Shown: piece by piece, positions 5,701 through 60,703 of the stretch | Layout: each line of letters starts with the position of its first letter | Numbering within the stretch: position 1 is the stretch's first letter | Assembly: GCA_002269645.1 (NCBI GenBank) | Contig: NIVC01000934.1 | Span: 186,001 to 250,000 of the forward strand | DNA length: 64,000 bases | Direction: 5' to 3' | From: Macrostomum lignano | Taxonomy: Eukaryota | The notes under the pieces: model-generated | What the model was told of the DNA's origin: nothing | Databases searched by the model: none | Seen by the model: only the letters and a program-made list of their open reading frames with translations | Position numbers and translations under genes: made by a program

Positions 5701-8579
5701 ACCTATTTCAAGTGCTCCTTCGATTCCGTCGCGGTCCAGTGGCAATCGTTTGCGACATTGAAGAGATGTACCTTAGAATTCGCCTCAAGCCAGAAGATCG
5801 GCGCTACTTTCGATTTTTGTGGCGAGACAGGAACGAAACGGGCAAACCTGAGGTATTCGAGTTTCAGAGTGTCGTTTTTGGAGTTAATTGTTCGCCGTTT
5901 CTTGCTCAGTTCGTTTCGCAGGAGCATGCTAGGAGTCATCAGGAAACTTTTCCAAGAGCGTCAGAAACCATTCTGAAGTCGACCTACATGGACGACAGTT
6001 TGGACTCAGTGAGCAGCGTCCATGAAGCTATCCAGTTGCGCCGCGAACTGACAGCTCTGTGGGAAAAAGCCGGCATGCGTGCGAGAAAATGGATGTCGAA
6101 CGCGTCTGAGGTGTTGGAGACAGTAGCTCCGGAGGATCGAGCGGTGAAAGCGCAGCACGTGCTTCGTGGAGAAATGGCGACGTCGAAGGCGTTGGGAGTG
6201 ACTTGGACAGCCAATGATGATATGCTCGCGATCACGGGAAATGCAGGTGCGAAGGAAGTGTCCGTTGAGTCGAAACGACAGCTGCTCAAGCGCGTTGCGA
6301 TGGTGTTCGACCCATGCGGGTTTCTGAGTCCATTTACAATTCGCGGGCGAATTCTTCTGCAGGAGATTTGGCAGAATGGAGCGGATTGGGATGAGCCCTT
6401 GGACCAGCAAGTTGCCGCGAAGGCTACGCAATGGGCAGCGGAGATTGAAGAGTTGAGCATGCTGAAAATTCCACGATGTCTATGGCCTGATCCTACCAAA
6501 AAGGCAGTGCTACACGTCTTTGTGGATGCATCTCAGGTGGCTTACGGCGCGGTAATCTATCTCAGGAGCGCCACAAGCCTGGACAAAATCTGTGTTCGTC
6601 TTGTAGCCGCAAAAGCACGTGTAGCTCCATTGGCAGCATGCAGCATCCCCAGACTCGAGCTCATGGCGGCGGTGCTTGGCGTGCGACTCGCCCAGACGGT
6701 GGCAGATGCGCTCGATTTAGACCTGAGAGAGTCGGTGTTCTGGAGTGACAGTGCAAATGTGCTCTGGTGGCTTCGAGGTCGCAGTAGAATTTTCAAGCCG
6801 TTCGTAGCAAATCGTGTTGCGTTCATTCAGGAGGCGGTGAAGACTTGTCAGTGGCGTCACGTGCCGACCGATCTGAACCCCGCTGATGCCGTATCGCGAG
6901 GCTGTAGCGCCAAAGACCTTTGCCAATCAGCGGTCTGGAGCGCGGGACCAGAGTTTCTGCTGCTAGATGAGGATGGCTGGCCGGCAAGGCTAGTTCCGAC
7001 ATCGGTTGACGGAGATCAAGAAGTTCGGCGAGAGGCGAGCAAGAGTAGTAAATCGGCGGCCGTAACTCTGTTGTCGAACGACACCACAGACAACGATTGG
7101 CGTTTGAATCCAGAGCGATTTTCGAGCTACCGCAGGCTGCGTAGCGTGACAGCATGGGTTCAGCGCTTCATCAGTAATTGCCGACTTCCGCGAGATGAGA
7201 GACGACTTGGTGACCTCGAGGTCGAGGAGCTGCAAGAAGCTGAGGATCGAATCCTACGCGTGGCTCAGGAAGAAGCTTTCAAAGCAGAAGTTCAGCAGGT
7301 GCGTAGGGGAAAGCCAGTCTTCTCCAGCAGTCAGCTTCGCTGTCTCCAACCATTTCTTGATGAGGACGGACTGCTGCGAGTGGACGGAAGACTGAAGTTC
7401 GACCAGAATCTGTCATATCAGTCCAAGCATCCGGTCATTCTGCCGAGGCGAAGTTGGGTCACGAAGTTGTTGGTGAAGCACTATCACGAAGATCAAGGAC
7501 ATGGCGGAACAAACCAGACGCTGGCAGCGATGTCGACGAAGTTTTGGGTAGTCGGTGGGCGCGAAGCCATTCGAGAATGGGAGAAGGAGTGCGCGCGATG
7601 CAGAAGGCAAAAAGCAGGACCGGAGGTGCAGCAGATGGCGCCGCTGCCAGAGGCCAGGCTGAAGAACTCTCTCCGAGCGTTCAGCTTTGTGGCAGTCGAC
7701 TTCGGTGGTCCGTTTGAAACGGTACAAGGGCGCGGAAGACGGCGAACGAAGAGGTATTTGGCCCTGTTCACCTGTTTGGAGACGAGAGCCGTGCACCTGG
7801 AAATGGCGTACAGCTTGGATTCTGACTCATTTCTGAATGCTTTCGCGCGCATGATCAACCGTAGAGGCCGGCCACTCGAAGTTTACTCCGATAACGGCGG
7901 CAACTTTGTCAAAGGCGAGCGAGAACTACGAGAATTCGAAAACGAGCAGCAGAACAAAATCCAGAGAGCGGCAGCTGAGCGCGGCATCAAGTGGCGCTTC
8001 CAGCCTCCGTCGGCGCCCCATTTCGGCGGCTCCCACGAAGTTATGGTTCGCGCCGCTAAGCGAGCTGTGCGCGCCATCCTTAGCAACGCTGACATCACCG
8101 ACGAAGAGCTGCATTCCGCCTTCACCGGTGCGGAAGCGCTCATCAATTCCAGGCCGTTGACATACCAAACCGCAAGCCCAAAGGACGACACGCCGTTGAC
8201 GCCAAACCATTTCTTGCATGGACAGCTGGGTGGTGACTTTGCTACGGAAGTCTCGACCGAGGTCAGCCGCGACCCGCGCCGGCGGTGGCGACGTGTCCAA
8301 GAGCTGGTGCGGCACTTCTGGCACCGATGGCTGCGTGAGTGGGTGCCAAGACTCAATGCCAGATCCAAGTGGGTCAAGGAGCAGCCGGATCTCGCCGTCG
8401 GCGACATCGTCTTGGCGCTACGAGCGGATGCGCCTCGAGGACACTGGCCGCTCGGGCGAGTTCTCGAGGTATTTCCTGGACGAGACGGCCATGTGCGCGT
8501 GGCCAAGGTGCGGACTGGCGGTGGGACAGTGCTGCGACCCGTGACGAAGTTGTGTCTGCTGCAGCGAGGTGAACAGTGA
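2787..8579 (+). CDS. Bel/Pao gag-pol polyprotein, 1930 aa (gag-PR-RT-RNaseH-IN)
   Basis: Three Cys/His knuckles (CRVCEGSHGAWEC, CFHCLGVNHSGLAC, CGVDGCQGKHHRMLH), protease LLDDAS, RT YMDD, RNase H HVFVDAS, integrase HHCC plus VDFGGP/SDNGGNF/GGSHE; no stops. Confidence 0.97.
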   Translation: MQKDGEEFESNYPPADEEERKLMDAKAAKTRAKAAFTKGRNRLVQQLAAGGQDGAEVQQQATLMEKLFEAVTTELEKLLELAGNDLPLRRQTIKELENAEKDYGETVGLMTEFWKDRSRSEAAEREEQDRLAESEEQQRREEEQRKVQAAEHRALELEEVQRELERDYQQRHEQLAEELRRLKIVTGSTKAESPCERASPGSGLAEQSIGAEVGVSAAPDRSEKADWTAHEGGSGERSIKQNPAPRPATSQSASVQSQLREPIVQQECTQRVREEAERQVSQDMWRQLQRVAIPSFSGDKRQYEGWKAAFYACVDAAPSSRVYKLLQLRQCLQGDALKLIANLGHSEFAYKAALDRLEREYGGERRRLVLVLEDLDRFRPIVTESAPQLKKLADLVDVAVINLMEAGREAELDSNGLLHLRVQKKLPTDTLARYHRWVGENGRNDTLSALHQWLLREAEYQTVAMEAVHGVAAQNGPGAGKMEQSKKFSGMQRTETARTHFGAVAESTRADEQRKKNCRVCEGSHGAWECPKFAEMDVVKRWAVAREKKLCFHCLGVNHSGLACRRSRTCGVDGCQGKHHRMLHQKREPKPAAAVTRGGEGEARKPAEDISAATKKERTMLAEVVKETALRTVPVILVAGERQVRINALLDDASTRTYLNADVAAELGLEGKLQRINVKVLNGGVESFETAPVEVTVRSVDAAFETKIVAFTAEKVTGGMKAVDWSQLAEHWAHLRGIPFESTSSRKTVDMLIGVDNAEMHLACKEVCGMPGEPIARLTPIGWTCIGQLGSDEGSSKSGESFLCHECQDQVDSQVRRLWAIEEVPDVAELNRERGTLTADEQHAVAVVKESMSVVEGRYQVAIPWKSQNRALPSNREAAERRLISTEKRLQRSEGLPKAYQEVLEGQLEKGYLKKVEDSSELQNTEWYLPHFPVIREDKDTTKVRIVFDASARCQGVSLNDVILPGPKLQNDLFQVLLRFRRGPVAIVCDIEEMYLRIRLKPEDRRYFRFLWRDRNETGKPEVFEFQSVVFGVNCSPFLAQFVSQEHARSHQETFPRASETILKSTYMDDSLDSVSSVHEAIQLRRELTALWEKAGMRARKWMSNASEVLETVAPEDRAVKAQHVLRGEMATSKALGVTWTANDDMLAITGNAGAKEVSVESKRQLLKRVAMVFDPCGFLSPFTIRGRILLQEIWQNGADWDEPLDQQVAAKATQWAAEIEELSMLKIPRCLWPDPTKKAVLHVFVDASQVAYGAVIYLRSATSLDKICVRLVAAKARVAPLAACSIPRLELMAAVLGVRLAQTVADALDLDLRESVFWSDSANVLWWLRGRSRIFKPFVANRVAFIQEAVKTCQWRHVPTDLNPADAVSRGCSAKDLCQSAVWSAGPEFLLLDEDGWPARLVPTSVDGDQEVRREASKSSKSAAVTLLSNDTTDNDWRLNPERFSSYRRLRSVTAWVQRFISNCRLPRDERRLGDLEVEELQEAEDRILRVAQEEAFKAEVQQVRRGKPVFSSSQLRCLQPFLDEDGLLRVDGRLKFDQNLSYQSKHPVILPRRSWVTKLLVKHYHEDQGHGGTNQTLAAMSTKFWVVGGREAIREWEKECARCRRQKAGPEVQQMAPLPEARLKNSLRAFSFVAVDFGGPFETVQGRGRRRTKRYLALFTCLETRAVHLEMAYSLDSDSFLNAFARMINRRGRPLEVYSDNGGNFVKGERELREFENEQQNKIQRAAAERGIKWRFQPPSAPHFGGSHEVMVRAAKRAVRAILSNADITDEELHSAFTGAEALINSRPLTYQTASPKDDTPLTPNHFLHGQLGGDFATEVSTEVSRDPRRRWRRVQELVRHFWHRWLREWVPRLNARSKWVKEQPDLAVGDIVLALRADAPRGHWPLGRVLEVFPGRDGHVRVAKVRTGGGTVLRPVTKLCLLQRGEQ

Positions 8580-21667: not shown

Positions 21668-22882
21668 TCACTGCTTCCTCCCCGTCGCCGCCTCGCTGGT
21701 TGAGGCGTCTCGGCGCGTCGTCGAAGCGGCGCTTCGGTGCTGCGATCGAGAGGCTCCCCCGGACCGGACTTCCGGTAGTTCGTAGGCCACGGCTCGCTGC
21801 CGACTGCCGCTGCGACCGCGGCCGCGGCAGCGGAGCAGCTGCGTGGCGGCCTGCTTGAACTGGGCGCTGCGGGACAGCAGCACGAAGACGCTGACGCACT
21901 GGTTCACCAGGGCCAGGCACATGCTGGAGTAGGCCAGGTTGGCCAACCTAGTTATGTAATTCTCATTCCGAAGGATGTCCATCGTATCCAGAGCCACCTC
22001 CAAGATCGGACGGACGATCATCAGCGGCGCGTGCAGCACCAGGTAGATGCAGCCGAGAATGAGCACGATCATAGTCCCGCTCATGTCGCTTCCGCCCGGC
22101 TGCGGCTGTCCAGAGGTCAGGGCGCTGCGTTTCCTGAGCACAGTGGCAACCTTGTAGATGAGCACCAGGTCAAGCACAAGGATCACGAGAATGAACAGTG
22201 TGGGAGGATTGGAGACGATAGTCGTGAAAAACATCATGAACATCCGGGACTGCGGCAGGTGGTAGCAAGAAACGAAGGCAGCTCCCCGAGCGTAGATGTA
22301 CTGATGCCCGGTGAAGACGATGTTCGGAACGCAGGCGAGCGCTGCCACGAGCAGGCTGAGCAGCAGGGCTCCTGCGGCCCAGCGCCGGCCCACCTGCTTC
22401 AAAGCCAGCGGTCGCAGCACCACCAGCACCCGGTCGCTGACCAGTACCAGGAGCCACAGGCAGGTCAGCAAGTGTAGAAAGTTCGTCAGGCCCCTTGACG
22501 CTCTGCAGGCGATGTCGCTGAGGTTGTACAGCATGAAGGACACCCGGCCTTTGGTCAGCCACGGGAGGCCTTTGTTCACCAAGCCGAACATTCCGCCATT
22601 GACAACCAGCGACAGCAGGTCCGCAAAGGCGATGCAGCCGAGGTACAGGTTCTGCCTGGTGAGCGGCCGAAGGCGAGCCAGCATGACCACGGCAACCAGG
22701 ATGTTTCCCACGGTTCCAACCAGGAGCAGCACTGGCATGACTACGGCAGAGAGAGCTCCGGACACGATGGACAGGACGCAGTTGGTCATGCGAGAGGCCT
22801 TCCCGCTGGCGCAGTCTCTCACCATTCCCAGGCCGCTCTCAAGAAACTGCACTCGCAGCGGGGCGCTGACATTGACGTTCAT
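21668..22882 (-). CDS. Intronless class A (rhodopsin-like) GPCR, 404 aa (GPCR1)
   Basis: Seven hydrophobic segments; TM1 PVLLLVGTVGN, TM2 LYLGCIAFADL, TM3 Cys and SDRVLVV (DRY-like), ECL2 Cys, N-terminal NVS sequon. Confidence 0.92.
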   Translation of the reverse strand: MNVNVSAPLRVQFLESGLGMVRDCASGKASRMTNCVLSIVSGALSAVVMPVLLLVGTVGNILVAVVMLARLRPLTRQNLYLGCIAFADLLSLVVNGGMFGLVNKGLPWLTKGRVSFMLYNLSDIACRASRGLTNFLHLLTCLWLLVLVSDRVLVVLRPLALKQVGRRWAAGALLLSLLVAALACVPNIVFTGHQYIYARGAAFVSCYHLPQSRMFMMFFTTIVSNPPTLFILVILVLDLVLIYKVATVLRKRSALTSGQPQPGGSDMSGTMIVLILGCIYLVLHAPLMIVRPILEVALDTMDILRNENYITRLANLAYSSMCLALVNQCVSVFVLLSRSAQFKQAATQLLRCRGRGRSGSRQRAVAYELPEVRSGGASRSQHRSAASTTRRDASTSEAATGRKQ

Positions 22883-25047: not shown

Positions 25048-26290
25048 TCAACTCCGATCAGCCGGAGCTTCGGTGCCACGGCTTGCCGGGGCAAGATTCG
25101 CCATCGGGATCGGCGTTCTCCGACTGACAGCTGCTGACGCCGTGTTTCGGCGCCGGGACTGACAAGGGTTCCCAGACTGGAGCTCGGGAACACCGTAGGA
25201 TGAGCATCTTCTCCTCGGGCCATCGCCACCGCCGCGGCAGTGTAGCAGCTCCTTGGCGGCCTGCTTGAACTGTGCGTTGCGGGACAGCAGCACGAAGACG
25301 CTGACGCACTGGTTCACCAGGGCCAGGCAAATGAAGTCGTAGTTCAGATTCCCAATCACGGAGATACGACTCAAATCTCCGTTGCGGCCGAGATTGTCGA
25401 AGGCGAATTCCAGCATCGGCCTGGCAACAATCAGCGGTGCGTGCAGCGCCAGGTACGCGCACCCGATGATGAGCACCACCACAGTGCCGCTCGTGGCCGC
25501 GCCCCTGGCCTGCTGCTGGCTGGAGGTCAGGGAGCGCCGAACTTTGAGCGCAGAGCTGACCTTGTAGATCAACAGCAAGTCCAGCAGCAGAATGATGAAG
25601 ATGAACACTGTCGGAGGATAGGAGACGATCAGCTGTAGAACAGCATGAACTCACGGGCATGCGGAACCGTGTAGCAGTAGATGAGCGCGGTGCGAGGAAA
25701 ATAGACGTATTGGTGGCCTGTCAGCAGACTGCTTGGCAATGCGATGAGCACCGTGCCGAGCAGGCTGAGCAGCAGGGCTCCTCCAGCCCAGCGCCGGCCA
25801 ACCTGCTTCATGGCCAGCGGCCGCAGCACCACCAGCACCCTGTCGCTGACCAGCACCAGGAGCCACAGGCAGGTCAGCACCTGCAGTACATTTGTTACTC
25901 CTCGCGCAGCTCTGCAGCCGGCATCGCTCAGGTTGTAGAGCATAAAGGACACTCGACCTCTGGTCAGCCACGGCAGGCCCTTGTTCAGCAGACCGTTGAA
26001 TGTGCCGTTGAAAATCAGCGATATCAGGTCCGCGATGGCGATGCAGCCGAGGTACAGGTTCTGCCTGGTGAGCGGTCTCAGCCGAGCCAGCATGTTGTGG
26101 GCTACGAGCAGGTTGCCCAGGACTCCAATGAGCAGCAGCAGCGGTACGAGCACAGCTGACAAGGCTCCAGATACGATGGACAAGGCGCAATTGAGCGTCC
26201 GGGAGGCCTGTCCGCTGTCGCAATCTGCCATCATTCTCATTCCCGCCTCTAGGAACCGCGTCCGCAGCTCGCATTGCTGCCGTCAGTCAT
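25048..26290 (-). pseudogene. GPCR paralog (GPCR2, ~414 aa if repaired) with two 1-bp deletions (~26266 and ~25632); pseudogene or assembly error
   Basis: Colinear with GPCR1. CCACC-ATG start at 26290. Adding one C at each site gives a 1245-nt open frame. Confidence 0.8.
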
Positions 26291-28350: not shown

Positions 28351-29609
28351 CACTCCTACTGTTAAAGCGCCATTTTGTAGCTCAAAAGACACAAACGTAA
28401 AATGCAGAGCTCCTGGTTACGAGTATTTTCATTTAGTTTAAAAGTTTATTTGATTCATTTTGTGGTGTCTGGCCTGTTGAGTGCTCTTGCACTTTTTGAG
28501 TTTTTTTCCGTGCGCCCTAGGCGGCCATCCCCGGACCAGTTCTGGCTGCCCAACCAGGCAGAACTGGTTGGGGGTCGCCCGGCACGGCTTGTGTCTTTCC
28601 CCGCGGCGGCCTCTGATTGGCTGGGCCTGTGAGTTTGCGCTTTTCGCTCTAGCCCCCATTCAGTCAGATCTGCTCGGCGGGCACGCTGATTGGCTGAGAG
28701 GTCATTTCTTTTGTTTGGCGTTTCTCTCTTTCACACTGTCTGCCCCTCTACGCTGTTTCAAGCGAGCCGTGTCTAGACGGTCTCTTACTGCGAAGACTGT
28801 TAATTTTGCATGCGATACTCAAGCGAGCCGTGTCTAGACGGTCTCTTACTGCAAAGACTCAATTTATTGCATGCCAAGTGGCCAAGTGGTCAAGTGCTAG
28901 CGATATTCAAACGAGCTTCACAGCTTCTGGCACCGGTAAGACCCCAAGTTCATTTACTTCTTTAGCTTTTCTGAGGCCTTGCCGTAGCAGTGGTTCCATA
29001 GCTAGAGCGTCATCACGCCTGCGACTGTGACCACTGCAGCACAGCAGCGTTGTATAATTATTGTAGTACTGTACCGGTTACTTTATATAGTGTGTACAAC
29101 CTACAGTATCGAAACTAGAAGCACTCGAGAGTGTCACCACACCTCGAGCTGCAGCGTGAACTCGGAGTGTCACAACACTAGATGGAGCGACCCATTATCG
29201 CAGAGCGTCGCCACGCCTGCTCGTATCCATACAAGTACCAGACAGAGCGTCACTACGCCTGTTATATTACGTATAACATATTGTACCTGGGACTGGGCAC
29301 TCAAACCGACCCGGGTTACGACAATTGGATGTGCTTGCCACTTTGCAGAAGTACTTTTATATCTGTTAACTGTTGTCACGACTAGTCAAGAACAGTCGAG
29401 GATTAGGGATTTAGGTCGGGATTCCGTCCGAGCACTATCATAGGACGGATACTAATGTATACCAGATGAACTTAGAGCACGCATTAGGCATATTTAGCAG
29501 AACACTGACATTCACCGAGATTTAAAAGCTAAGTTTGAGATGCTAAATCTGAATATTGCTTATTATTGTTAAATAATATTTGCCAAAAAGTTCAGAAAAA
29601 TGCCACAGC

Positions 29610-30438
29610 TCAGATGCCAATTAGAAGAGCCAGCAGAGCGCACAGGCAGTCAATGATGGATGGACAGCAGAATGAGACAGAAGTGCAGGACTTGCCACGG
29701 CCTCGTCCAGAGGACACCGGCGTCATCAGGATTCCCGATGGCATCGAGCACAACTCCAGCGGTGCTGAAGCTGCGGAGCTCGATGCAGCAGCCCCAGAAG
29801 GAGAACGGAACGCGGAACAGAAAGGCGAATATGGCGAGCAAAAGTGCGCAGGCGGATGGTAGCAGCAGCTTGATGAGGCTTCCTAGTGGGACAAATTTCT
29901 TGAAGGCGTAGAGATACTGGGTTCGGAGAGCGTTCAGTGGGATATTGTGCAGCAGCGAGATGAGCAGGCTGAGCAGCAGGGCGCTGCGGCCAGCCCGGAT
30001 TCTCTTTAGCTGTTGATCCGAGAGTCGCTTTCGTCTGCGGCCGGTCTGGACTCTCCTGTTGCTGATCCGTAAGTCGCTTTTGTCTGCAAATTTACTGCTT
30101 CAGGGTAATGGAAGAGTTCAATGTAACAGAGCTCAATTTAAAGGCAGCTAACCTTCTTCGCGAACGGTAGTTACACAGCAGCAGGAGGTGCTGAACACAA
30201 TCAGTACGCCTAGGAGCAGAATGCCAGCAATCACTACAAACAGAATGTACAGCGGTTGCAGATGGCTGATCTTGGCGGTGCAGTCTCTGTCAGAGCAGGA
30301 GCAGTGAGATGTCGACAGGTACAAAATCATGACACCTGGAAGGATCAGCCAGCTGCCCAATCGTTTTTGAAAGGATTCAGCGTTGCGGCCTTCAATAGCA
30401 GCTTCGATTGCTCCAGGTATTTCGGCGGCCACTTCCAT
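29610..30438 (-). pseudogene. Multi-pass membrane protein paralog A (exons 30438-30153, 30083-29650), probably decaying
   Basis: Near-identical to paralog B but with a 75-bp in-frame deletion in exon 1 and a 4-bp TGGA duplication (29657-29664) causing a premature stop; the ancestral stop is at 29610-29612. Confidence 0.75.
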
Positions 30439-31860: not shown

Positions 31861-32194
31861 CCTACTGTTGAAGCGCCATTTTTTAGCTCAAAAGACACAA
31901 AGATAAAGTTTTGCACAGGCAGAGCCTTGATTAGGAGTATTTTCGTTTCATTTGATGCGTGTGCCATTGTGCATAAGTAGTTATTATTTATATCACTTTT
32001 TAGCAACTTTACTTGAAGGAAAGGTGCTGTCACGACTAGTTAAGAACAATCGGGGATTTGGGTCGGGATCTCCTCCGAGCAACTATGGAATTTTAGGTTC
32101 GCATGAAGTCGTGAGTAACAAAATAGTGGCATTCACAGTGATTTAAGAGCTAAGTTTGATTTACTGAATCTGAATATTGCTGGTAATCTTGAAA

Positions 32195-32412
32195 TAAATG
32201 AGAGAACAAAAATTAACTTGTTTTTATTTACTTTAATTCAATTGCCAATGCATTTCGACCCTTGTAGGTCATCGTCAGGGCAGTAGTGAAATTGAAAATT
32301 TTAATAAACAGTTGAATAAATATACCTGTAATAAGTTGATTACACAATATAAATTAATGTACGTAGTTTTCAATCGAAACAAGTTAACACACGGTGCGAG
32401 CAACTCTACCAG
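32195..32412 (-). mobile_element. 218-bp Penelope-like retroelement 3' fragment
   Basis: Absent at the homologous site of unit 1; flanked by 10-bp direct repeats AATCTTGAAA (32185-32194, 32413-32422); contains a hammerhead followed by AATAAA. Confidence 0.75.
32243..32282 (-). ncRNA. Minimal type I hammerhead ribozyme
   Basis: TGCC-CTGACGA-T-GACC(TACAAG)GGTC-GAAA-TGCA-TT-GGCA: intact core, 4-bp stem II, palindromic minimal stem III, AUU cleavage triplet, 4-bp stem I. Confidence 0.82.
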
Positions 32413-32450
32413 AATCTTGAAAGAATCTTTAAGTTCAGAGAACTGCAACC

Positions 32451-33348
32451 TCAGATGCCAATTACAAGAGGCAGCAGAGCGCACAGGCAGTCAATAATGG
32501 ACAGCAGGATGAGGCAGAAGTGCAGGACGCGCCACGGCCTCGACAGCAGGACATTGTCATCAGGATTCCCGATTGCAGCCCGCACCACTCCAGCGGTGCT
32601 GAAGTCGCGGAGGTCGCTGCAGCGGCCCCAAAAGGAGAACGGAACGCGGAACAGAAAGGCGAATATGGCGAGCAAAAGTGCGCAGACGGATGGTAGCAGC
32701 AGCTTGATGAGGCCTCTTAGTGGGATAAATTTCTTGAAGGCGTAGAGATACTGGGCTCGCAGAGCGTTCAGCGGGACAGTGTGCAGCAGCGAGATTAGCA
32801 GGCTGAGCAGCAGGGCGCTGCTGCCAGCCCGGATTCTCTTTAGCTGTTGATCCTTGAGTCGCTTTCGTCTGCGGCCGGGCTGGACTCTCCTGTTGCTGAT
32901 CCGTAAGTCGCTTTTGTCTGCAAATTTACTGCTTCAGGGTAATAGAAGAATTTAATGTAACAAAGCTCAAATTAAAAGGCAGCTAACCTTCTTCGCGAAC
33001 GGTAGTTACACAGCAGCAGGAGGTGCTGAACACAATCAGTACGCCTAGGAGCAGAATGCCAGCAACCACAACAAACACAATGTACAGCGGTTTCAGATGG
33101 CTGATCTTGGCGGTGCAGTCTCTGTCAGAGCAGGAGCAGTGAGATATCAGCTGCTCAGGACACGTTACGTTAAAGGTCAACGTCTGTAGCTCCGAGGCAG
33201 CGGTGCAATCTAGCACGAACTGCGACAGGTACAAAATCATGGCACTTGGAAGGATCAGCCAGCTGAACAATCGTTTCTGAAAGGATTCAGCGTTGCCATC
33301 TTCAACAGCAGTTTCGATTGCTTCGGGTATTTTGGCTGCCACTTCCAT
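32451..33348 (-). CDS. Unrecognised ~5-TM membrane protein, paralog B (275 aa; exons 33348-32988, 32917-32451)
   Basis: 70-bp phase-1 GT-AG intron joins two ORFs in frame; conserved among four paralogs. Confidence 0.82.
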
Positions 33349-38575: not shown

Positions 38576-39709
38576 TCAGATGCTAAGCAGAAAAGCCAAC
38601 AGAGCGCACAGAAAGTCGATCATAGACAGAAGGATGAGACAGAAGTGCAGGACTCGCCCCGGCCTCGACAGCAGGACATTGTCACCAGGATTCCCTATGA
38701 AATCCCGCACCACTCCAGCGGTGCTGAAGCCACGGAGGTCGCTGCAGCAGCCACAGAAGGAGAACGGAACGCGGAACAGAAAGGCGAATATGGCGAGCAA
38801 AAGTGCGCAGGCGGATGGAAGCAGCAGCTTGATGAGGCTTCCTAGCGGAAGAAATTTCCTGAAGGCGTAGATATACCGAGCTCTGAGAGCGTTCAGTGGG
38901 ATATTGTGCAGCAGCGAGATGAGCAGGCTGAGCAGCAGGGCGCTGCGACCGGCCCAGATTCCCTTACTGTTGATCGGAGGGTCGCTTTTGCTGGGGCCGG
39001 CCTGGGCTCCCCCGCCGTAGGTCGCAGGGTCACTTTTGCTGGGGCTGGCCTGGGCTCCCCCGCCGTCGGTCGCAGGGTCGCTTTTGCTGGGGCCGGCCTG
39101 GGCTCCCCCGCCGTCGGTCGCAGGGTCGCTTTTGCTGGGGCCGGCCTGGGCTCCCCCGCCGTCGGTCACAGGGTCGCTTTTGCTGGGGCCGGCCTGGGCT
39201 CCCCCGCCGTCGGTCGCAGGGTCGCTTTTGCTGGGGCCGGCCTGGGCTCCCCCGCCGTCGGTCGCAGGGTCGCTTTCGTCTGAAAATTTAATGCTTCAGA
39301 GTAGTAAAAGAATTTAGTGTAACAAAGCTTTAATTAAAGGCAGCTAACCTTCCTCGCGAACGGTAGTCACACAGCAGCAGGAGGTGCTGAATACAATCAG
39401 TACGCCTAGGAGCAGAATGCCAGCAATCACTACAAACAGAATGTACAGGGGCAACAGATAAATGATATGAGCGGTGCAGTCTACGCCAGTGCAGGAGCAG
39501 TAAGACGTCAGCTGCTCAGGACACGTTACGTTAAAGGTCAACGTCTGTAGCTCTGAGGCAGCAGTGCAATCTAGCACGACCTGCAACAGGTACAAAATCA
39601 TGACACCTGGAAGGATCAGCCAGCTGCCCAATCGTTTTTGAAAGGATTCAGCGTTGCGGCCTTCAATGGCAGCATCGATTGCTTCAGGTATTTTGGCTGC
39701 CACTTCCAT
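38576..39709 (-). CDS. ~5-TM membrane protein, paralog C (354 aa; exons 39709-39349, 39279-38576) with six 16-aa loop repeats
   Basis: 69-bp phase-1 GT-AG intron; open frame; close homolog of A and B. Confidence 0.82.
38990..39279 (-). repeat. Coding VNTR, 6 x 48 bp (SDPATDGGGAQAGPSK)
   Basis: Units anchored at 39001, 39049, 39097, 39145, 39193, 39241. Confidence 0.95.
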
Positions 39710-51335: not shown

Positions 51336-53827
51336 ATGGGCTCCTCTAACCAGGATGACCCGCTGCCCAAAGAGGTGTACTCCAGGTGGGCGGACTGGCT
51401 GCTAGGCTCCTCGGAGTCTCTGTGGGCCCAGGAGCCGCCGGACCAGCAATGGCCGGACAGCAGCAAGGAGGAGGACCTGGAGATGCGACTGCCAGCTGAG
51501 CTGCTCAGCGACATCAACAATGCCACGGCTGAGCTGCCGCCCACCATGCCGCCGCCGCTGCTGCCGCCTCCACCTCTGCAGCAACAGCAGCAGCAACAGC
51601 AGCCAGTGCAGCTGCCTGCCCACCACCAGCCGCTGATGCCGCCCGGCCCCAGGCCTCTCGAAACCGGCGGCCATCCGGATCGTCGGGAGCGGACAACGTC
51701 GACCAGTTCAGCGGCCACGCGTGCGCTGCGCCTGTCTCAGATTCCTCCGCTGATGCCGCAGCCGCCGCCCAACGCAGCCAGGCACCAGCCGCATCAGCGC
51801 CCAGCCTCCTCCAGCAGCGTTGGCGCCACCGCTGCACCAGTGCGACAGCCGCGCCGACGGCAGAACCGGCAGGCGACACCGCCGGCAGCTGTGGCAAACG
51901 CCGGGGTGGCTGCCAGCGTCGCGGGCGTCTCCGCGGCGTCGGCACCGGTTTCTGCTGCTGCCAATTGCGGTCACTCCGCGACTGCCGGCGCTGCGAACTC
52001 CGCGCCGGCCGAAGAGATGCCGCCACCTCCGCCGCCGCCGCCGGCTCCATCAGCGCCGACACCTGTCGGGCCGGACAGCAGCCGGAAGCCGACCTACTCG
52101 GACATCATCAAGAAGCAGAAGGCCGCCGCCGCTGCCGCTGCAGCCGCCGCCGCCACTGCGGCTGCTTCGAGCTCTGCGGGCTCTGCAGCCGGGTCGCAGG
52201 CTGCCTCGTCGCCGAGTCATCAGCGGGCGGCGGCAGGCGACAGCCCAGTCAGGACTCAAGCCGCCGCTGCCCCAGCAGCACCTGGCAAGCGAGAGGCGTC
52301 CGCTGCAGCTGGACCTGCCGCGGTTCGAAATGCCGGCCACCCTGCAGGCGTAAATTCTGGGACTGCGGCCGCTCAGCCGTCTGGGACCGCGGCAACGCCA
52401 GCGGCTCCGAGCTCCAGCGACTCGACCAACTCGACCTCCGTCACCGGGCGGCGCGGCAATCGCCAGACATCTGCTGGCCGGCCGCTAGCCATCCCGCGCC
52501 GCAGGCCACAAAGTCTCAGCATCATCATGCAGTCCAGCCTCCTGGTCCCAATCATCATCATCAACAGCAGCAACAGCAGCAGAAGCTGGCCGATGGCGCG
52601 CAGCAGCGATCCGCTTCCATAGACTTGTCTCAGCCATCGCCGCTGCCGGCCCAGCCGCTCAGCGGCAGCAGCGAGGACCGGCGCCAGCAGCAGCTGCTCA
52701 ACAACGCCAAGCCGTTGCCGCCCGGCCACTGCGGCGGCGGCTCCGCCCCGGCCACCGCCGGCTTCATCAACAATCTGCACCGGGGCTCCTGCGACAGCAG
52801 CAGCCTGGACGACAGCGCCGGGAGCGGCAGCGGCGTCGGTGGCAGTCGCCAGGCTCTGGCCGGCCGGCCCAACAGCGCATCCGGCAAGTCCGGTGCGGCG
52901 GCTTCAGCGGCCCGGCGTCGGCAGACTGCAGGCGGCGCCTCTTCCGCCTCCACAGGACGGTCCGGTGGAGCTTCAGGCGGCTCCAGCGCCTCGGGTAGCG
53001 GCGGAGGCGGCAGCGGCCTTGTTGAAGGCGCCTCGCTGCTGCTGGTGGCCTTCTTCCAGCTGCTGCTGTGCTGCGTCCGCTCCCTGGCCGCGGCCGCCGT
53101 TGGCCTGGCGCTGTCCTGCCTGGCCTGGTGCCGCCAGCACCGTCAGCAGCGTCGCCGGCGCCGCCGCCCAGCTTGGCTGCCGGCCGGCCTGCAGGCAAAC
53201 GTGGAGCTGCCGCTGACCGCCGAGGACACGGTGCGCCGCCTGCTGGCCTGCCAGGACCACCGCGACGCCTACAGCGTGCTGGGCGTCAGGCGGGACGCCG
53301 AGCAACGGGAGATTGTGCAGCACTACCGGCACCAGCTCCGCCTGCTGCAAGCCGCGCCAGCGGCCACCTCACCGGGGGTGCACGAGGCCGCCCAACTGCT
53401 GCAGCGCGCCTTCGCCCTGCTGGACGGCCACGCCAACAGGCGCGAATTCGACAGCGGGGCGGCCGGTGGCCACGCCGACATGGCGCAGCTGGCGGCCGAC
53501 CTGCAGCTGGCGGTGCACCGCCTGCCCTGCGCCAGGTGCTCCGGCCGGCACCTGTGGCTGCCCACCGACCTCAGCCCGCAGGCCGCCCGCTACTGCTCCG
53601 CCTGCCGCGTCCGCCACCCGGCCCAGGACGGCGACCTGTGGGCAGAGTCGCGCCTGCTGGGCCTTCGCCGGGTCTTCCTGGCCTGCCAGGACGGCCGGGT
53701 CTGCCAGGTGAACGAGCTGGCCAGGTGCCAAGCTGAGCTGTTCGCCAAGCTGCAGCCCGACTGCCACCGCTGCCAGCTGCGCCGGGCCGAGGCAGCCCCG
53801 CCCTACCGGTTCGTCTACAGAAAGTAG
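51336..53827 (+). CDS. DNAJC14: DNAJC14/Jiv-like protein (low-complexity N-terminus, TM segment, J-like domain, Jiv90 domain); one apparent 1-bp frameshift near 52478
   Basis: AYSVLGV...IVQHYR...AFALL...RREFD J-like fold; Jiv90 motifs CARCSGRH, ARYCSACRVRHPAQDGDLWAESRLLG. Start codon uncertain. Confidence 0.8.
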
Positions 53828-56800
53828 CGGCGCCTGCCCTCACTCTTGATTGTGTTTTGTAAGATTGTGACTGATAATGAATGACAACTAGGAGTCCTCT
53901 AGTGGGGCTCGGTTGCAGGCAAATTCCAGTCTTGCCACACGGTCTGGTTTCACAGAATCGAGCTAGTAAAACGCTATCGCAGGTTTTTTAACTGGAGGAT
54001 TGTTTATGGAATTTTCCTGCAAACTGGTTGATCCCCCGCCGCTCGGATGGTTCCGCTTTTACTCAGACTCGAATGCCGCGATGCCCCCCATGGCGCTTAG
54101 ACACCCGCCTGTGTTTGCTGCCCCCTCCCCTGCTCTGCCTCTGTCTGCTTTTTTCTTACTCAGACTTCAGCGCTTTTCTACATCATCTCAATAAGCAAAG
54201 CTTGCTACTGCGTCCGCCCCTGGCCCTACGGTTCTGATTAATTATTTATTAATTTGCAGTTAATAGCCGCCCTCCTCCAGACTGCCCAAGCCGACTGTTT
54301 TGCTAGATTCGTAGCGTACATTTCTTACATACAGTAAGCTTTAATCTCACGTCACTAATACTGATTAATAATGATAATATTATATAATAATCTGCTTGGC
54401 GGACTTGACAGCACAATTGGCCTTTGGCGCTGAGATATTTTTGCTCCGGTTCAACTTGCGCTTATTGAGCGGCATTCTGTAATTTTATCTCATATCTGCC
54501 TTGCGCGGCTTATGTATACTACTCACCAAATGCCGATTTGTTAGTAGTATGTATCGCCAGGGACACTATTATAATAATGATAAAATCTATTTTTACTATT
54601 TAGTGCTAAACAGGAAGGTGCCATCCAATGTCAGTGCTCATTGGTCCAGTGCAGTCTAGAGTGCGCACTCGCCAGAGTAACTTCCCCTCAAGACTGGTTG
54701 GTCAGCAGTTCTTCCATCCTTGGTGCAGAATCCGACATCGTCAGCAGCAGAAAGCGGTGGCTTCAAGCCCTCAGTGCCTTTTGTGTGTGTGTTCGTCCCA
54801 AAATAAATCAGTAAGGCAGTAGAGCTCTTTAATTTTTTCGACGTATGTCGATGTGTCAGCCGGCCTTTTCTCAATATCCCCAGCGAAATGTCCCCTTTCC
54901 TGCCGACACTTTTCTCCGTGGTTTTCTGAGTTCATTGTTCTCCTTTTATCTTTTTAACAACTGTTATCACACAGCCAGTTTGGGAATTACAATTATATTT
55001 CTAAGAAAATTTACACGACGCTTCACTTTAACGGTTGAGGTTTCTGCTCTTCTATTGTTGCATTCTAAAAACTGAAAATTTGTCTTGCAATTTCCTTTTT
55101 TCCGAGCCAAAGTTATAATAAGCTGACCTGCAGACGCTAAAAAATGAGGATCAAAACATAAGCGAAAATGATGCATATTTTCAAACAGATCCGTTAGACT
55201 TGTTTAACATATGATCTCCATTGATTATGTTCATGTAAATCTTCTGTGACTATGTATGGGCATTCAGACTCATCACAAAATTTTTCGAAAAACATGCCTT
55301 TGAAGACTTGAAGACGCAAGAAATTTGAGAAGCAGCGCAACTATTGTCAAGCTCTATACGTTAATAAACGGAAAAAACCATTCGGAATATGATTATTCAA
55401 CGTTTCCTTTTTATTGTGAAAATCTATATTAATAGTTAAAAATTTAAAGATAATTCAAAGTAAGTTATGAGCTCACTAACGACGCAAGAGAACATGTCTC
55501 AAATGAGTTTGTTTTTATCCTACGTTTTAACGCGCTTTTCAAAAAGGACGCTCTCGTCTTCCACGGCTCGCCCGACACTTCTTTGCGTGCCCTCGGCAAT
55601 GTTCAAACTGCTGCCTGTTGTGACCTGGAAGTTTTGTGAAAACTGAAGAGTTACAAAGGTTAAGTCAAAAAGTTTTACAGTAGCCTAATTAAATAGCTAG
55701 GAAATGTGTAGTTGTGCTCTGCATCAAGCAGATGTGTATTGAAAAGCTTAGAAGTGACTATGCCATTCAAGTTTGGCACCGTGTCAATAATGGGTGTATA
55801 ACATATAATAGCGTCGGCTAATTAGTATCTTAATGTCATAGGCCTAACTTTATACCACATAATTCGATATATGGCTTTTTATTATATGTTAATGACTTAT
55901 TGGCTTATTGCATCATAGGCCTATGCTTGAATGAATATATAAAGTGCAATATCAAGTACCAAGACTTCCTTGGTAGTATAGCATTGCTGGCTTTGATCCT
56001 TTGCCTGTAACTAAAGCTTTTAGGTGGTTGTAACCTATATTTTCTCTTCAAATTATAAGTCACATTGGCATTCTTAGCTGATTAAGTCATTGGTTAATAT
56101 ACTTTGTAGGGAATTGTGGCTGCTTCTATGACTATAGTAGGCACTTCAGTGAGAAAATTAAATTTCAGAAATTGTTATAGGCTGCTATTTCACTAGATAG
56201 ATCTTACTTTCCCATTTCCAAAATGGCCAAACTTTAGTGATTTGGTTGAGTAATAAGGAAACTACAGCTATTTTAGTAACCCCGATTTGTGCCTTTAGCC
56301 AATGGAATTTTTACATTACGGTTTGTGATCATTTTTGGCCAAAAAGTTGGCTTTTTGTCTTTGAACACTTGTAATTAATTTTCTAGCCAACCAAAATGAC
56401 TGTGCTTGGTGTCATTTTGTTCAGTTTTTTAGTGTTAATTGTATGAATTATATATTTTAATATTATTTTATATGCCCAAGTTGCTAAGCTAATTGAAACA
56501 GGATGGGTGTATGAAATTTTGACTATTTTAACCAGATACGCAATGATTGCAATTTTAAAAATACAATAGCATCTGTTCTGCTTGCTTAATTTATACAAGG
56601 CTAGTGTCATTTTGTTCAGGTTTTTACCTACTATAATACTATTCTACTTCTTGCCCTAAATTTTTAATGCATGACAGACACCCCAACTGCAATGTAATGT
56701 GCTGTACAGGCTTTGCGCATGGGTTTATTAAAAAACGGTTTTGCCTATCGTGTTCAGCATAGCAGAATTAGTTAAATGACACAGAGAACTAGTTTGCCGG

Positions 56801-60253: not shown

Positions 60254-60703
60254 ATGGAGCGCACCTACATCATGATCAAGCCGGACGGTGTCCAGCGCGG
60301 CCTTGTTGGCAAAATCATCAAGCGATTCGAGCAGCGCGGCTTCCGCCTGGTTGCCATGAAGATGATGCAGCCCGGCCGGCCGCTGCTTGAGGAGCACTAT
60401 GGCGATCTCAAGGCCAAGCCGTTCTTCCCCGGCCTTATCGACTACATGCTGTCCGGCCCGGTGGTCTGCATGGTCTGGGAGGGCGAGGAGGTGGTCAAGA
60501 TCGGCCGCATGATGCTGGGCGCCACCAAGCCGATTGACAGCCTGCCCGGCACCATCCGCGGCGACTATTGCATCGTGACTGGCCGCAACATCGTGCACGG
60601 CTCGGACGCGGTGGCCTCCGCCCAGAAGGAGATCGCCCTGTGGTTCAAGCCGGAGGAGCTGGTGGACTACAAGCTGGCCAACCATGGCTGGATCTACGAG
60701 TAG
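60254..60703 (+). CDS. NME: Nucleoside diphosphate kinase (group I NME), 149 aa, intronless
   Basis: [19 protein letters not shown]...PGTIRGD...NIVHGSD (catalytic His)...WIYE. Confidence 0.97.

What the first reader, a model, noticed from the sequence alone, without database searches (positions are those of the whole stretch)
32185..32422. Hammerhead ribozyme inserted sense into the probable 3' UTR of paralog B
Seen: a 218-bp insertion with a 10-bp TSD begins ~40 nt after the B stop codon. It carries a complete hammerhead core on the coding strand (32282-32243) directly followed by AATAAA (32228-32223). Known: Penelope-like elements carry minimal type I hammerheads with a palindromic stem III that cleave mainly as dimers. 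Inference: the insertion may give B a new poly(A) signal and a self-cleavage site just upstream of it, altering mRNA stability relative to the other paralogs. A lone minimal copy may cleave poorly.
Basis: partly seen in the sequence, partly recalled or inferred. Interest (0 to 1): 0.7.

Follow-up and report, generated by a model that had tools for sequence, protein, structure and literature searches.

The report
Retroelement hammerhead ribozyme behind a flatworm gene
A 218-bp piece of a Penelope-type jumping gene carrying a minimal hammerhead ribozyme landed just after the stop codon of a Macrostomum lignano membrane-protein gene; the motif is real, but this is an ordinary event and a single copy is unlikely to cut.

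Summary
Window 32195-32412 is a 218-bp insertion flanked by an exact 10-bp duplication (32185-32194 and 32413-32422). It is absent from paralogs A and C and starts 39 nt after the TGA of paralog B.

On the gene's strand it carries a complete type I hammerhead (32282-32243). My full descriptor finds it once in the window and never in 300 shuffles. It also shows three hallmarks published for Penelope-like-element (PLE) minimal hammerheads: an extra U between A9 and G10.1, a G10.1-C11.1 pair, and a palindromic AUGCAU in place of helix III.

Metagenomic PLE fragments (GIY-YIG ORF followed by a hammerhead) have the same architecture with covariation. A covariance model built only from them scores the window motif 35.6 bits (E 4e-8).

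The organism is Macrostomum lignano. B's two-exon model matches an annotated M. lignano protein.

The best reading is a 5'-truncated or non-autonomous PLE-type retroelement copy in B's probable 3' UTR. It supplies the only AATAAA/ATTAAA hexamers within 1.5 kb of the stop. As a lone copy it is probably inactive: published PLE minimal hammerheads do not cleave as monomers and cleave poorly as dimers.

I could not find the parent element, and no RNA data were available. This is a new member of a known kind, of low to moderate interest.

The parts
32195..32412 (-). 218-bp retroelement insertion. The element's sense strand is the minus strand, with its 5' end at 32412 and 3' end at 32195. It has no terminal inverted repeats, no poly(A) or microsatellite tail and no ORF.
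   Evidence: Absent from paralogs A and C. Sequence read. No other copy in the window or in 88 kb of other M. lignano loci.
32413..32422 (.). Target-site duplication, gene-proximal copy (AATCTTGAAA on the plus strand).
32185..32194 (.). Target-site duplication, gene-distal copy (AATCTTGAAA on the plus strand).
32243..32282 (-). Minimal type I hammerhead. Helix I 5' strand UGCC 32282-32279; core CUGACGA 32278-32272; extra U 32271; helix II GACCU/GGGUC with ACAA loop 32270-32257; GAA 32256-32254; palindrome AUGCAU 32253-32248 (helix III only as a dimer); U17 32247; predicted cleavage between 32247 and 32246; helix I 3' strand GGCA 32246-32243.
   Evidence: Descriptor search: 1 hit, 0 of 300 shuffles. 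Covariance model built without this sequence: 35.6 bits, E 4e-8. The predicted lowest-energy dimer is the double hammerhead, -29.7 against 2 x -12.6 kcal/mol.
32223..32228 (-). AATAAA hexamer, 18 nt after the predicted cleavage site and 28 nt before the element's 3' end. Probably the element's own poly(A) signal.
32232..32237 (-). ATTAAA hexamer inside the insert, downstream of the hammerhead.
32300..32305 (-). ATTAAA hexamer inside the insert, 148 nt after B's stop and upstream of the hammerhead. If used, transcripts would end before or within the ribozyme.
32451..32917 (-). Paralog B exon 2, including the stop codon TGA at 32453-32451.
   Evidence: Gene model from the A/B/C alignment. Start, splice junction and C-terminus agree with the annotated M. 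lignano protein A0A1I8H4K1.
32988..33348 (-). Paralog B exon 1 (ATG at 33348-33346). A 70-nt GT..AG intron spans 32987-32918.

Best explanation
The window is Macrostomum lignano DNA. After the tandem duplication that produced paralogs A and B, a short retroelement copy integrated 39 nt downstream of B's stop codon, in the same orientation as the gene. Staggered nicks at an AT-rich site left a 10-bp duplication.

The copy is either the 5'-truncated 3' end of a Penelope-like element or a non-autonomous derivative mobilised by one. It carries that family's minimal type I hammerhead, in which helix III is replaced by the palindrome AUGCAU. The catalytic fold therefore needs two copies paired through that palindrome.

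No poly(A) signal fits between the stop codon and the insertion site, so the insert almost certainly lies inside B's primary transcript, in its 3' UTR. Its most likely consequence is passive. It brings three canonical poly(A) hexamers where the native sequence has none, so B mRNAs probably now end inside or at the end of the insert.

The hammerhead is most likely a silent passenger. It could cut only if it paired with a second RNA carrying the same motif, or was helped by PLE protein.

Shown here: the insertion, the duplication, the motif and its family architecture, the gene model and the poly(A) hexamer distribution. Inferred: PLE-mediated integration, 3' UTR status, poly(A) site use and catalytic inactivity.
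For: **Insertion and duplication:**

**Motif beyond chance:** (0 of 300 shuffles).

**Link to PLEs:**
- Contig L004 has an ORF that passes Pfam's GIY-YIG cut-off (23 bits against 22.6), followed about 125 nt later by a hammerhead of identical architecture.
- Its protein relatives L006, L007 and L008 (78%, 57% and 93% identity) keep the hammerhead at the same place.
- They show compensatory changes in helices I and II and in the palindrome (AUGCAU, AUCGAU, AUAUAU).
- Of 13 pairs, 9 have changes on both sides, 94.9% of cells are paired, and 0 of 500 shuffles reach this.
- A covariance model built from those five sequences alone finds the window motif at 35.6 bits, E 4e-8; the next best hit is 14.5 bits.

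**Dimer fold:** the predicted lowest-energy dimer is the double hammerhead.

**Retroelement-type ends:** a 10-bp duplication, no inverted termini, no tail, and an AT-rich target whose minus-strand nick falls after ATT. This matches the PLE endonuclease preference reported in PMC11167929.

**Organism:** (P0005 is 100% identical over 157 aa).

**Gene model and stop codon:**

**Poly(A) hexamers:**

**Low or absent monomer activity of this class:** PMC4209133, PMC6765202, PMC11167929.
Against: - No parent PLE and no second copy of the 218-bp element was found. There is none in the window and none in 88 kb of other M. lignano loci.
- The similarity to the metagenomic PLE 3' regions is confined to the hammerhead. 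Family membership therefore rests on motif architecture, not on homology to a PLE body.
- L004 and L005 were retrieved with a pattern derived from the window motif, so part of the model's score is circular. L006-L008 were found through protein homology and are independent of the motif.
- Helix II is 5 bp, shorter than the 6-8 bp described for many PLE hammerheads.
- No RNA data were available, so 3' UTR status, poly(A) site choice and cleavage remain inferences.
- The paralogs evolve under weak constraint (dN/dS 0.6-0.8), so B may matter little to the animal.
Confidence: 0.75

Rival explanations
1. The hammerhead cleaves B mRNA between the stop codon and the AATAAA, as the Clec2 3' UTR hammerhead does in mammals. 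It thereby lowers or regulates B expression relative to A and C. Cleavage might occur through pairing in trans with transcripts of other copies, or with the help of PLE protein.
For: - The geometry is right: stop codon at 32451, cleavage site at 32247/32246, AATAAA at 32228.
- The Clec2 precedent has the same layout (PMC6765202).
- The predicted lowest-energy dimer is an intact double hammerhead.
- One PLE hammerhead cleaved only when its own protein was added (PMC11167929).
Against: - There is a single copy in 64 kb, so no partner in cis.
- Monomeric PLE minimal hammerheads showed no detectable cleavage, and dimers only low cleavage at non-physiological Mg2+ (PMC4209133).
- In the anole, no RNA-seq reads began or ended at the hammerhead site (PMC11167929).
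- An ATTAAA upstream of the ribozyme may end transcripts before it.
- There is no conservation evidence, because the insertion is unique to B.
Confidence: 0.08
2. The insert is a monomer of a non-LTR retrozyme or an Sm-alpha-like SINE, rather than a truncated autonomous PLE. That is, it belongs to a non-coding hammerhead repeat family that propagates through small, possibly circular, RNAs.
For: - The 218-bp size falls within the 170-400 nt reported for metazoan retrozymes, which also have larger duplications and low GC (PMC7229834).
- Dispersed monomer copies are common in Xenopus, and retrozymes derive from PLE terminal repeats (bioRxiv 10.64898/2026.07.22.740005).
- Flatworm SINE-like hammerhead elements exist (PMC6765202).
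- A 16-nt, 88% inverted repeat links the two ends of the insert.
Against: - It is not tandem; there is only one unit.
- The hammerhead is the minimal PLE type, without loop 1, not the canonical loop-loop type I motif of retrozymes and Sm-alpha.
- The RNA folds no better than shuffles (z = +0.14), unlike highly self-paired retrozyme RNAs.
- No tRNA-like head was detected (no tRNA hit).
Confidence: 0.13
3. The hammerhead-like sequence is a chance match inside an unrelated insertion.
For: - The bare core pattern is not enriched: 4 matches against 5.15 expected.
- No Rfam hit.
- No second copy was found to show conservation within this genome.
Against: - The full descriptor gave 0 hits in 300 shuffled windows.
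- Three features that were not required by the core (extra nucleotide, G10.1-C11.1, 6-nt palindrome) all match the PLE class.
- The independent covariance model gives E 4e-8.
- The motif sits exactly inside a mobile-element insertion.
Confidence: 0.02
4. The 218 bp are ancestral and were deleted independently from paralogs A and C.
For: The 3' flanks of A and C are diverged and carry several indels.
Against: - An exact 10-bp direct repeat brackets the segment.
- The joined flanks recreate a single-copy site colinear with A.
- It would require two independent precise deletions.
Confidence: 0.02

Closest known systems
Minimal hammerheads of Penelope-like elements (Cervera & de la Pena 2014, PMC4209133; Lunse, Weinberg & Breaker 2017, cited in PMC6765202)
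   Same: Type I topology, short loop-less helix I (4 bp), an unpaired nucleotide between A9 and G10.1, the G10.1-C11.1 pair, and a palindromic sequence in place of helix III so that the active form is a dimer. The motif is dispersed as a single copy in a truncated element.
   Different: No RT/GIY-YIG ORF or terminal-repeat context is present here, and no other family members were recovered from this genome. Helix II is 5 bp rather than 6-8 bp. I found no paper describing hammerheads in Macrostomum.
   Same: Identical motif layout, including the extra U and a 6-nt A-NNNN-U palindrome. L004 shares the GACC/GGUC helix II stem and the AUGCAU palindrome.
   Different: Outside the hammerhead there is no sequence similarity. 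These fragments have a conserved GCGATGAAAC box 70-113 nt after the hammerhead that the window insert lacks. Their host organisms are unknown.
Clec2 3' UTR hammerhead of mammals (Martick et al. 2008, as summarised in PMC6765202)
   Same: A hammerhead in the sense strand of a 3' UTR, with its cleavage site between the stop codon and the poly(A) signal.
   Different: The Clec2 ribozyme is a discontinuous, fully formed monomeric hammerhead with demonstrated activity and an effect on expression. The motif here lacks a stable helix III and is a recent, paralog-specific transposon insertion.
Metazoan non-LTR retrozymes and schistosome Sm-alpha/Sj-alpha SINE-like elements
   Same: Short (about 200-350 bp), AT-rich, non-coding hammerhead-bearing retroelements. 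They are related to PLE terminal repeats, and their monomers are dispersed, occasionally in 3' UTRs.
   Different: Those carry canonical, efficiently cleaving type I hammerheads, usually in tandem arrays, and form highly self-paired RNAs. Here there is one copy with a minimal hammerhead, and the RNA is no more stable than shuffles.

Membership tests
Hammerhead ribozyme, type I | Conserved core C3-U4-G5-A6-N7-G8-A9, G12-A13-A14, A15.1-U16.1 and H17. | tested here: met
   CUGACGA ... GAA ... A-UGCA-U ... U17, read directly from the sequence and matched by the descriptor. One extra U follows A9.
Hammerhead ribozyme, type I | Three helices around the core, with the 5' and 3' ends in helix I. | tested here: inconclusive
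   Helix I is 4 bp and helix II 5 bp, with pairing probabilities of 0.68-0.81 and 0.89-0.98 in the UTR context. Helix III is only 1 bp with a 4-nt loop in the monomer. It becomes 6 bp only in the predicted dimer.
Hammerhead ribozyme, type I | Match to the curated Rfam hammerhead models. | tested here: not met
   No hit at the gathering score over the whole window, and none at E<=10 over 32100-32500. This is expected for a variant without helix III.
Hammerhead ribozyme, type I | Site-specific self-cleavage. | not testable with these tools
   Needs in vitro transcription or RNA end mapping.
PLE minimal hammerhead | [quoted passage not shown] | tested here: met
   U at 32271. The feature is listed in PMC4209133.
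PLE minimal hammerhead | Conserved G10.1-C11.1 pair. | tested here: met
   G at 32270 pairs with C at 32257. This pair is invariant in the 6-sequence alignment.
PLE minimal hammerhead | Palindromic 15.2-16.2 and loop 3, so that helix III forms between two copies. | tested here: met
   AUGCAU at 32253-32248. The predicted lowest-energy dimer forms the intermolecular helix III and helices I in trans.
PLE minimal hammerhead | Belongs to a multi-copy consensus family with covariation in the same genome. | tested here: inconclusive
   No further copy was found in 64 kb plus 88 kb of M. lignano DNA. The whole genome could not be searched by nucleotide. Covariation was shown only across metagenomic PLE relatives.
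Penelope-like element insertion | Element encodes, or is homologous to an element that encodes, an RT plus a GIY-YIG endonuclease. | tested here: not met
   The insert has no ORF, and the window has no EN-like sequence by tblastn with the L004 endonuclease. Homology to a parent element in the same genome could not be tested.
Penelope-like element insertion | 5' truncation, a target-site duplication, an AT-rich target, and no poly(A) tail. | tested here: met
   A 10-bp duplication at an AT-rich site with a minus-strand nick after ATT, no tail and no inverted termini. The reported target preference is in PMC11167929.
Metazoan non-LTR retrozyme | Tandem head-to-tail units, each with a canonical type I hammerhead. 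| tested here: not met
   A single unit, with no tandem copy. The hammerhead lacks loop 1 and has the PLE bulge.
Metazoan non-LTR retrozyme | A highly self-paired monomer RNA. | tested here: not met
   Minimum free energy -35.7 kcal/mol against a shuffle mean of -36.3; z = +0.14.
Sm-alpha-type SINE | A pol III A and B box or tRNA-derived head. | tested here: not met
   ARAGORN finds no tRNA and there is no tRNA family hit at E<=10. By eye there is only a weak resemblance to an A or B box.
Clec2-type regulatory 3' UTR hammerhead | Cleavage site between the stop codon and the poly(A) signal of a host mRNA. | tested here: met
   Stop at 32453-32451, cleavage site at 32247/32246, AATAAA at 32228-32223. 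Whether this stretch is transcribed as a UTR is inferred, not shown.
Clec2-type regulatory 3' UTR hammerhead | Active as found, and conserved among orthologues. | not testable with these tools
   No RNA or comparative data were available. The motif is absent from paralogs A and C.

The most novel reading that the evidence does not exclude
The lone minimal hammerhead makes B mRNA conditionally cleavable. When PLE transcripts or PLE protein carrying or recognising the same palindrome are abundant, they would pair with or assist the 3' UTR copy and cut off B's transposon-derived poly(A) signal. The output of a host gene would then be coupled to retroelement activity, as a trans-dimer ribozyme switch. 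In a genome with widespread trans-splicing and polycistronic precursors, the same cut could also separate B from downstream paralog A.
Probability: 0.04. Interest if true: 0.65.

Novelty: new member of a known kind. Interest (0 to 1): 0.22.

Why it matters
This is a clean, datable example of a Penelope-type hammerhead insertion into a gene's 3' region. The target-site duplication is exact, the empty site survives in two paralogs, and the animal is a transgenesis-capable flatworm that already has poly(A)-site and RNA-seq tracks. That makes it a convenient natural test of two questions. Can a single minimal hammerhead do anything in vivo? Has a transposon-borne poly(A) signal been adopted by a host gene?

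It also suggests, from one copy, that PLE-type minimal hammerheads occur in Macrostomorpha, where I found no report of them.

Otherwise it is what is expected in an animal genome that is more than half repeats. Such motifs number in the thousands per genome, and 3' UTR copies have been reported before.

Tried and rejected
- **Rfam.** No hammerhead hit at either threshold. The weak snoRNA and miRNA hits at E 0.07-10 are far below their gathering scores and I treated them as noise.
- **Exact-protein look-ups of window ORFs.** The GPCR-like ORF and the nucleoside diphosphate kinase ORF are not on record.
- **Word-indexed homologue search with B's exon-1 ORF.** It found nothing, although the exhaustive HMMER search later found the annotated M. 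lignano paralog P0032. The earlier negative was a sensitivity artefact.
- **Sampling other M. lignano loci.** L001, L002, L003 and L010 (88 kb) hold no copy of the insert and no hammerhead. One relaxed U3-A8 match in L003, with 3-bp helices, I dismissed as chance.
- **Collection scans with the motif pattern.** Viral and prokaryote-genome contigs gave nothing.
- **Reaching M. lignano PLE proteins through the L004 endonuclease.** Only four metagenomic relatives came back, none from M. lignano, so the parent element was not found.
- **P0032's locus.** The look-up was not on record.
- **tRNA-derived SINE head.** Not supported.
- **Retrozyme-like rod structure.** Not supported.
- **Plus-strand ORF 32455-32745.** I considered it as the real gene, which would make the insert 5' and antisense. 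I rejected this because the minus-strand two-exon model has conserved GT..AG splice sites and in-frame indels, and it reproduces the start, junction and end of an annotated protein.
- **PEVPEV-type repeat ORFs downstream of each paralog.** They stay open in several frames because the repeat period is 33 nt. I did not take them as evidence of coding sequence.

Full report
**What is at the coordinates**

On the minus strand, 32282-32243 reads UGCC CUGACGA U GACCU-ACAA-GGGUC GAA AUGCAU U GGCA. This is a type I hammerhead with these parts:
- a 4-bp helix I (UGCC/GGCA);
- the CUGANGA box;
- a 5-bp helix II closed by G10.1-C11.1;
- GAA;
- A15.1...U16.1 enclosing the palindrome UGCA;
- U17, with predicted cleavage between 32247 and 32246.

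One extra U (32271) sits between A9 and helix II. AATAAA follows at 32228-32223.

The segment 32195-32412 (218 bp) is bracketed by AATCTTGAAA at 32185-32194 and at 32413-32422.

**Is it an insertion?**

The window holds three tandem paralogs on the minus strand: A at 29.6-30.4 kb, B at 32.4-33.3 kb and C at 38.6-39.7 kb.
- B matches A on both sides of the segment, at 91.6% and 78%. About 220 nt are found only in B.
- Joining B's flanks with one repeat copy kept gives a sequence colinear with A and C across the junction.

An exact 10-bp direct repeat at the edges of a paralog-specific segment is the signature of a transposition that happened after the A/B duplication. The insert has no terminal inverted repeats, no poly(A) or microsatellite tail and no ORF. 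No second copy exists in the window.

**Is the hammerhead more than chance?**

The bare pattern CTGANGA-N-GAAA is not informative: 4 matches against 5.15 expected. A full descriptor requires helix I, the core, an optional bulge, helix II, GAA, a self-complementary A...U helix III and H17. It finds exactly this site in both strands of the window and nothing in 300 dinucleotide shuffles, at either of two stringencies.

Rfam 15 reports nothing at the gathering score, and no hammerhead at E<=10 locally. That fits a variant without a helix III hairpin.

**Which kind of hammerhead?**

Cervera and de la Pena (PMC4209133) list features that emerged in hammerheads of Penelope-like elements (PLEs) without being part of their search descriptor:
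- a conserved G10.1-C11.1 pair;
- a palindromic 15.2-16.2 and loop 3;

The window motif has all of them.

I scanned metagenome contigs with a pattern derived from the motif and got two hits. L004 carries a 181-aa ORF that passes Pfam's GIY-YIG cut-off. About 125 nt after its stop lies GUCC CUGAUGA U GACC..GGUC GAA AUGCAU C GGAC.

Relatives of that ORF were found by protein similarity, independently of the RNA motif. They carry a hammerhead at the same place with compensatory changes:
- helix II: GACC/GGUC, GGCU/AGCC, GGCG/CGCC and GGUCGC/GCGGUC;
- helix I: GUCC/GGAC and GCGC/GCGC;
- the palindrome: AUGCAU, AUCGAU and AUAUAU.

On the six-sequence alignment, 94.9% of cells pair and 9 of 13 pairs change on both sides. 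No shuffle out of 500 reaches this, and all slid registers collapse.

A covariance model built from the five metagenomic sequences alone scores the window motif 35.6 bits (E about 4e-8 over 305 kb). The next best hit is 14.5 bits. There is one caveat: L004 and L005 were retrieved with a pattern taken from the window, so part of that score is circular.

**Monomer or dimer?**

As a monomer the hammerhead fold is worth only -3.6 kcal/mol, against -11.0 for an alternative fold that pairs core bases. Two copies are predicted to form the classical double hammerhead. It has an intermolecular helix III through the palindrome and helices I in trans, at -29.7 against 2 x -12.6 kcal/mol.

The literature agrees on the behaviour of this class:
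- PLE minimal hammerheads show no detectable cleavage as single motifs, and low cleavage as dimers (PMC4209133; review PMC6765202).
- One PLE hammerhead cleaved only when its own protein was present, and left no cleavage-site reads in vivo (PMC11167929).

The window contains no partner copy.

**Organism and host gene**

The ankyrin-kinase gene next door matches Macrostomum lignano proteins. One UniRef entry is 100% identical over 157 aa. Related loci come from assembly GCA_002269645.1.

Aligning A, B and C gives a two-exon model with a 69-70-nt GT..AG intron and in-frame indels. For B the coordinates are:
- ATG at 33348;
- exon 1 ending at 32988;
- exon 2 at 32917-32451;
- stop codon TGA at 32453-32451;
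- a product of 275 aa.

An exhaustive HMMER search found a 273-aa M. lignano 'Transmembrane protein' (A0A1I8H4K1). Its start, splice junction and C-terminus coincide with this model, and it is 81-85% identical to the three paralogs. The stop codon is therefore well placed, and the insert body begins 39 nt after it.

Constraint on the family is weak, with dN/dS of 0.6-0.8.

**Consequences for the transcript**

No poly(A)-signal-like hexamer lies in the 38 nt between the stop and the insert. The native 3' end must therefore have been further downstream, which puts the insert inside the primary transcript. This is an inference.

Within 1.5 kb after B's stop, the only AATAAA or ATTAAA hexamers are three inside the insert: 32305-32300, 32237-32232 and 32228-32223. 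A and C have none for 784 and 951 nt. So the insert plausibly supplies B's poly(A) signal.

The AATAAA lies 28 nt from the element's 3' end, so it is probably the element's own terminator. The first ATTAAA is upstream of the ribozyme. Transcripts using it would lack an intact hammerhead.

**What the insert is**

The best reading is a 5'-truncated PLE copy or a PLE-mobilised derivative. The supporting points are:
- the PLE-type hammerhead lies about 50 nt from the 3' end, and in the anole PLE reverse transcription starts about 90 nt past the hammerhead cut site;
- the target-site duplication;
- the AT-rich target, with one nick falling after ATT;
- the frequent 5' truncation of PLEs (PMC8557442).

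I could not show homology to a PLE body. The window has no RT or EN remnant. Another 88 kb of M. lignano DNA holds no copy. The protein route to M. lignano PLEs failed.

A retrozyme monomer or an Sm-alpha-like SINE remains a lesser possibility. The unit is not tandem, its RNA is no more stable than shuffles (z = +0.14), and no tRNA-like head is detectable.

**Comparison with what is known, and novelty**

The motif works like a PLE minimal hammerhead and meets that class's motif-level criteria. Membership of a PLE family at the element level is untested.

The layout of stop codon, cleavage site and poly(A) signal resembles the mammalian Clec2 3' UTR hammerhead. That ribozyme, however, is a stable and active monomer.

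PLE hammerheads occur in thousands of copies per metazoan genome. Hammerhead repeats overlapping exons in Xenopus sit mostly in 3' UTRs. I found no paper on hammerheads in Macrostomum.

**Verdict**

This is a real and correctly read feature, and a new member of a known kind. Any functional effect most likely comes from the borrowed poly(A) signals rather than from catalysis.

Noticed in passing
window 2787-8579 (+): An uninterrupted 1930-aa gag-pol-type ORF that, read by eye, has protease, RT, RNase H and integrase motifs. It looks like a BEL/Pao-type LTR retrotransposon and is possibly still active. I deliberately did not fetch or reconstruct it.
   Followed up: no
window 29650-30438, 32451-33348, 38576-39709 (all minus strand): Three tandem paralogs of an M. 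lignano-specific multi-pass membrane protein (homologue A0A1I8H4K1). A has a 75-nt in-frame deletion and a 4-nt insertion that brings the stop forward. C carries six in-frame 48-nt repeats. dN/dS is 0.6-0.8.
   Followed up: partly
window 28434-29371: Paralog A has about 900 nt between its stop codon and the downstream repeat block that B lacks. This could be another insertion in A or a deletion in B.
   Followed up: no
window 32213-32228 and 32372-32387: A 16-nt, 88% complementary inverted repeat joins the 5' and 3' parts of the insert and abuts the AATAAA. The predicted fold uses it, but the insert's RNA is no more stable than shuffles.
   Followed up: partly
window 32272-32270; L004, L006, L007, L008 hammerheads: A9, the extra U and G10.1 together spell AUG. 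In the anole PLE the ORF is reported to start at stem II (PMC11167929). In the window copy this reading frame closes after 14 codons.
   Followed up: partly
L004 837-846, L006 1492-1501, L007 1059-1068: The metagenomic PLE fragments share a conserved box, GCGATGAAAC, 70-113 nt after the hammerhead. It could be a candidate tail or a reverse-transcription start signal. It is absent from the window insert.
   Followed up: no
window 19.5-21.0k, 23.1-23.7k, 28.1-28.4k, 31.0-31.9k, 40.2-40.9k, 41.1-41.7k, 61.2-62.9k: Dense mini- and microsatellite arrays with periods of 8-17 nt. Several have higher-order periods that are multiples of 3, which produce long spurious ORFs in several frames. This is typical of the repeat-rich M. 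lignano genome.
   Followed up: no
window 60254-60703 (+): An intronless 149-aa nucleoside diphosphate kinase ORF, about 70% identical by eye to vertebrate NME1/2. It may be a retrogene.
   Followed up: no
window 21668-22882 and 25048-26240 (minus strand): Two paralogous GPCR-like single-exon genes. The first is an intact 404-aa ORF. The second is split into two ORFs, by either a frameshift or a short intron.
   Followed up: no
window 52000-54000: A 70% GC block encoding a low-complexity Ala/Pro/Gln/Ser-rich ORF that ends in a J-domain-like segment. It contrasts sharply with the flanking DNA, which is 28-34% GC.
   Followed up: no
one search compared: The word-indexed protein search missed an 81-85% identical annotated paralog that the exhaustive HMMER search later found. 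A negative result from the indexed search should not be read as absence.
   Followed up: yes
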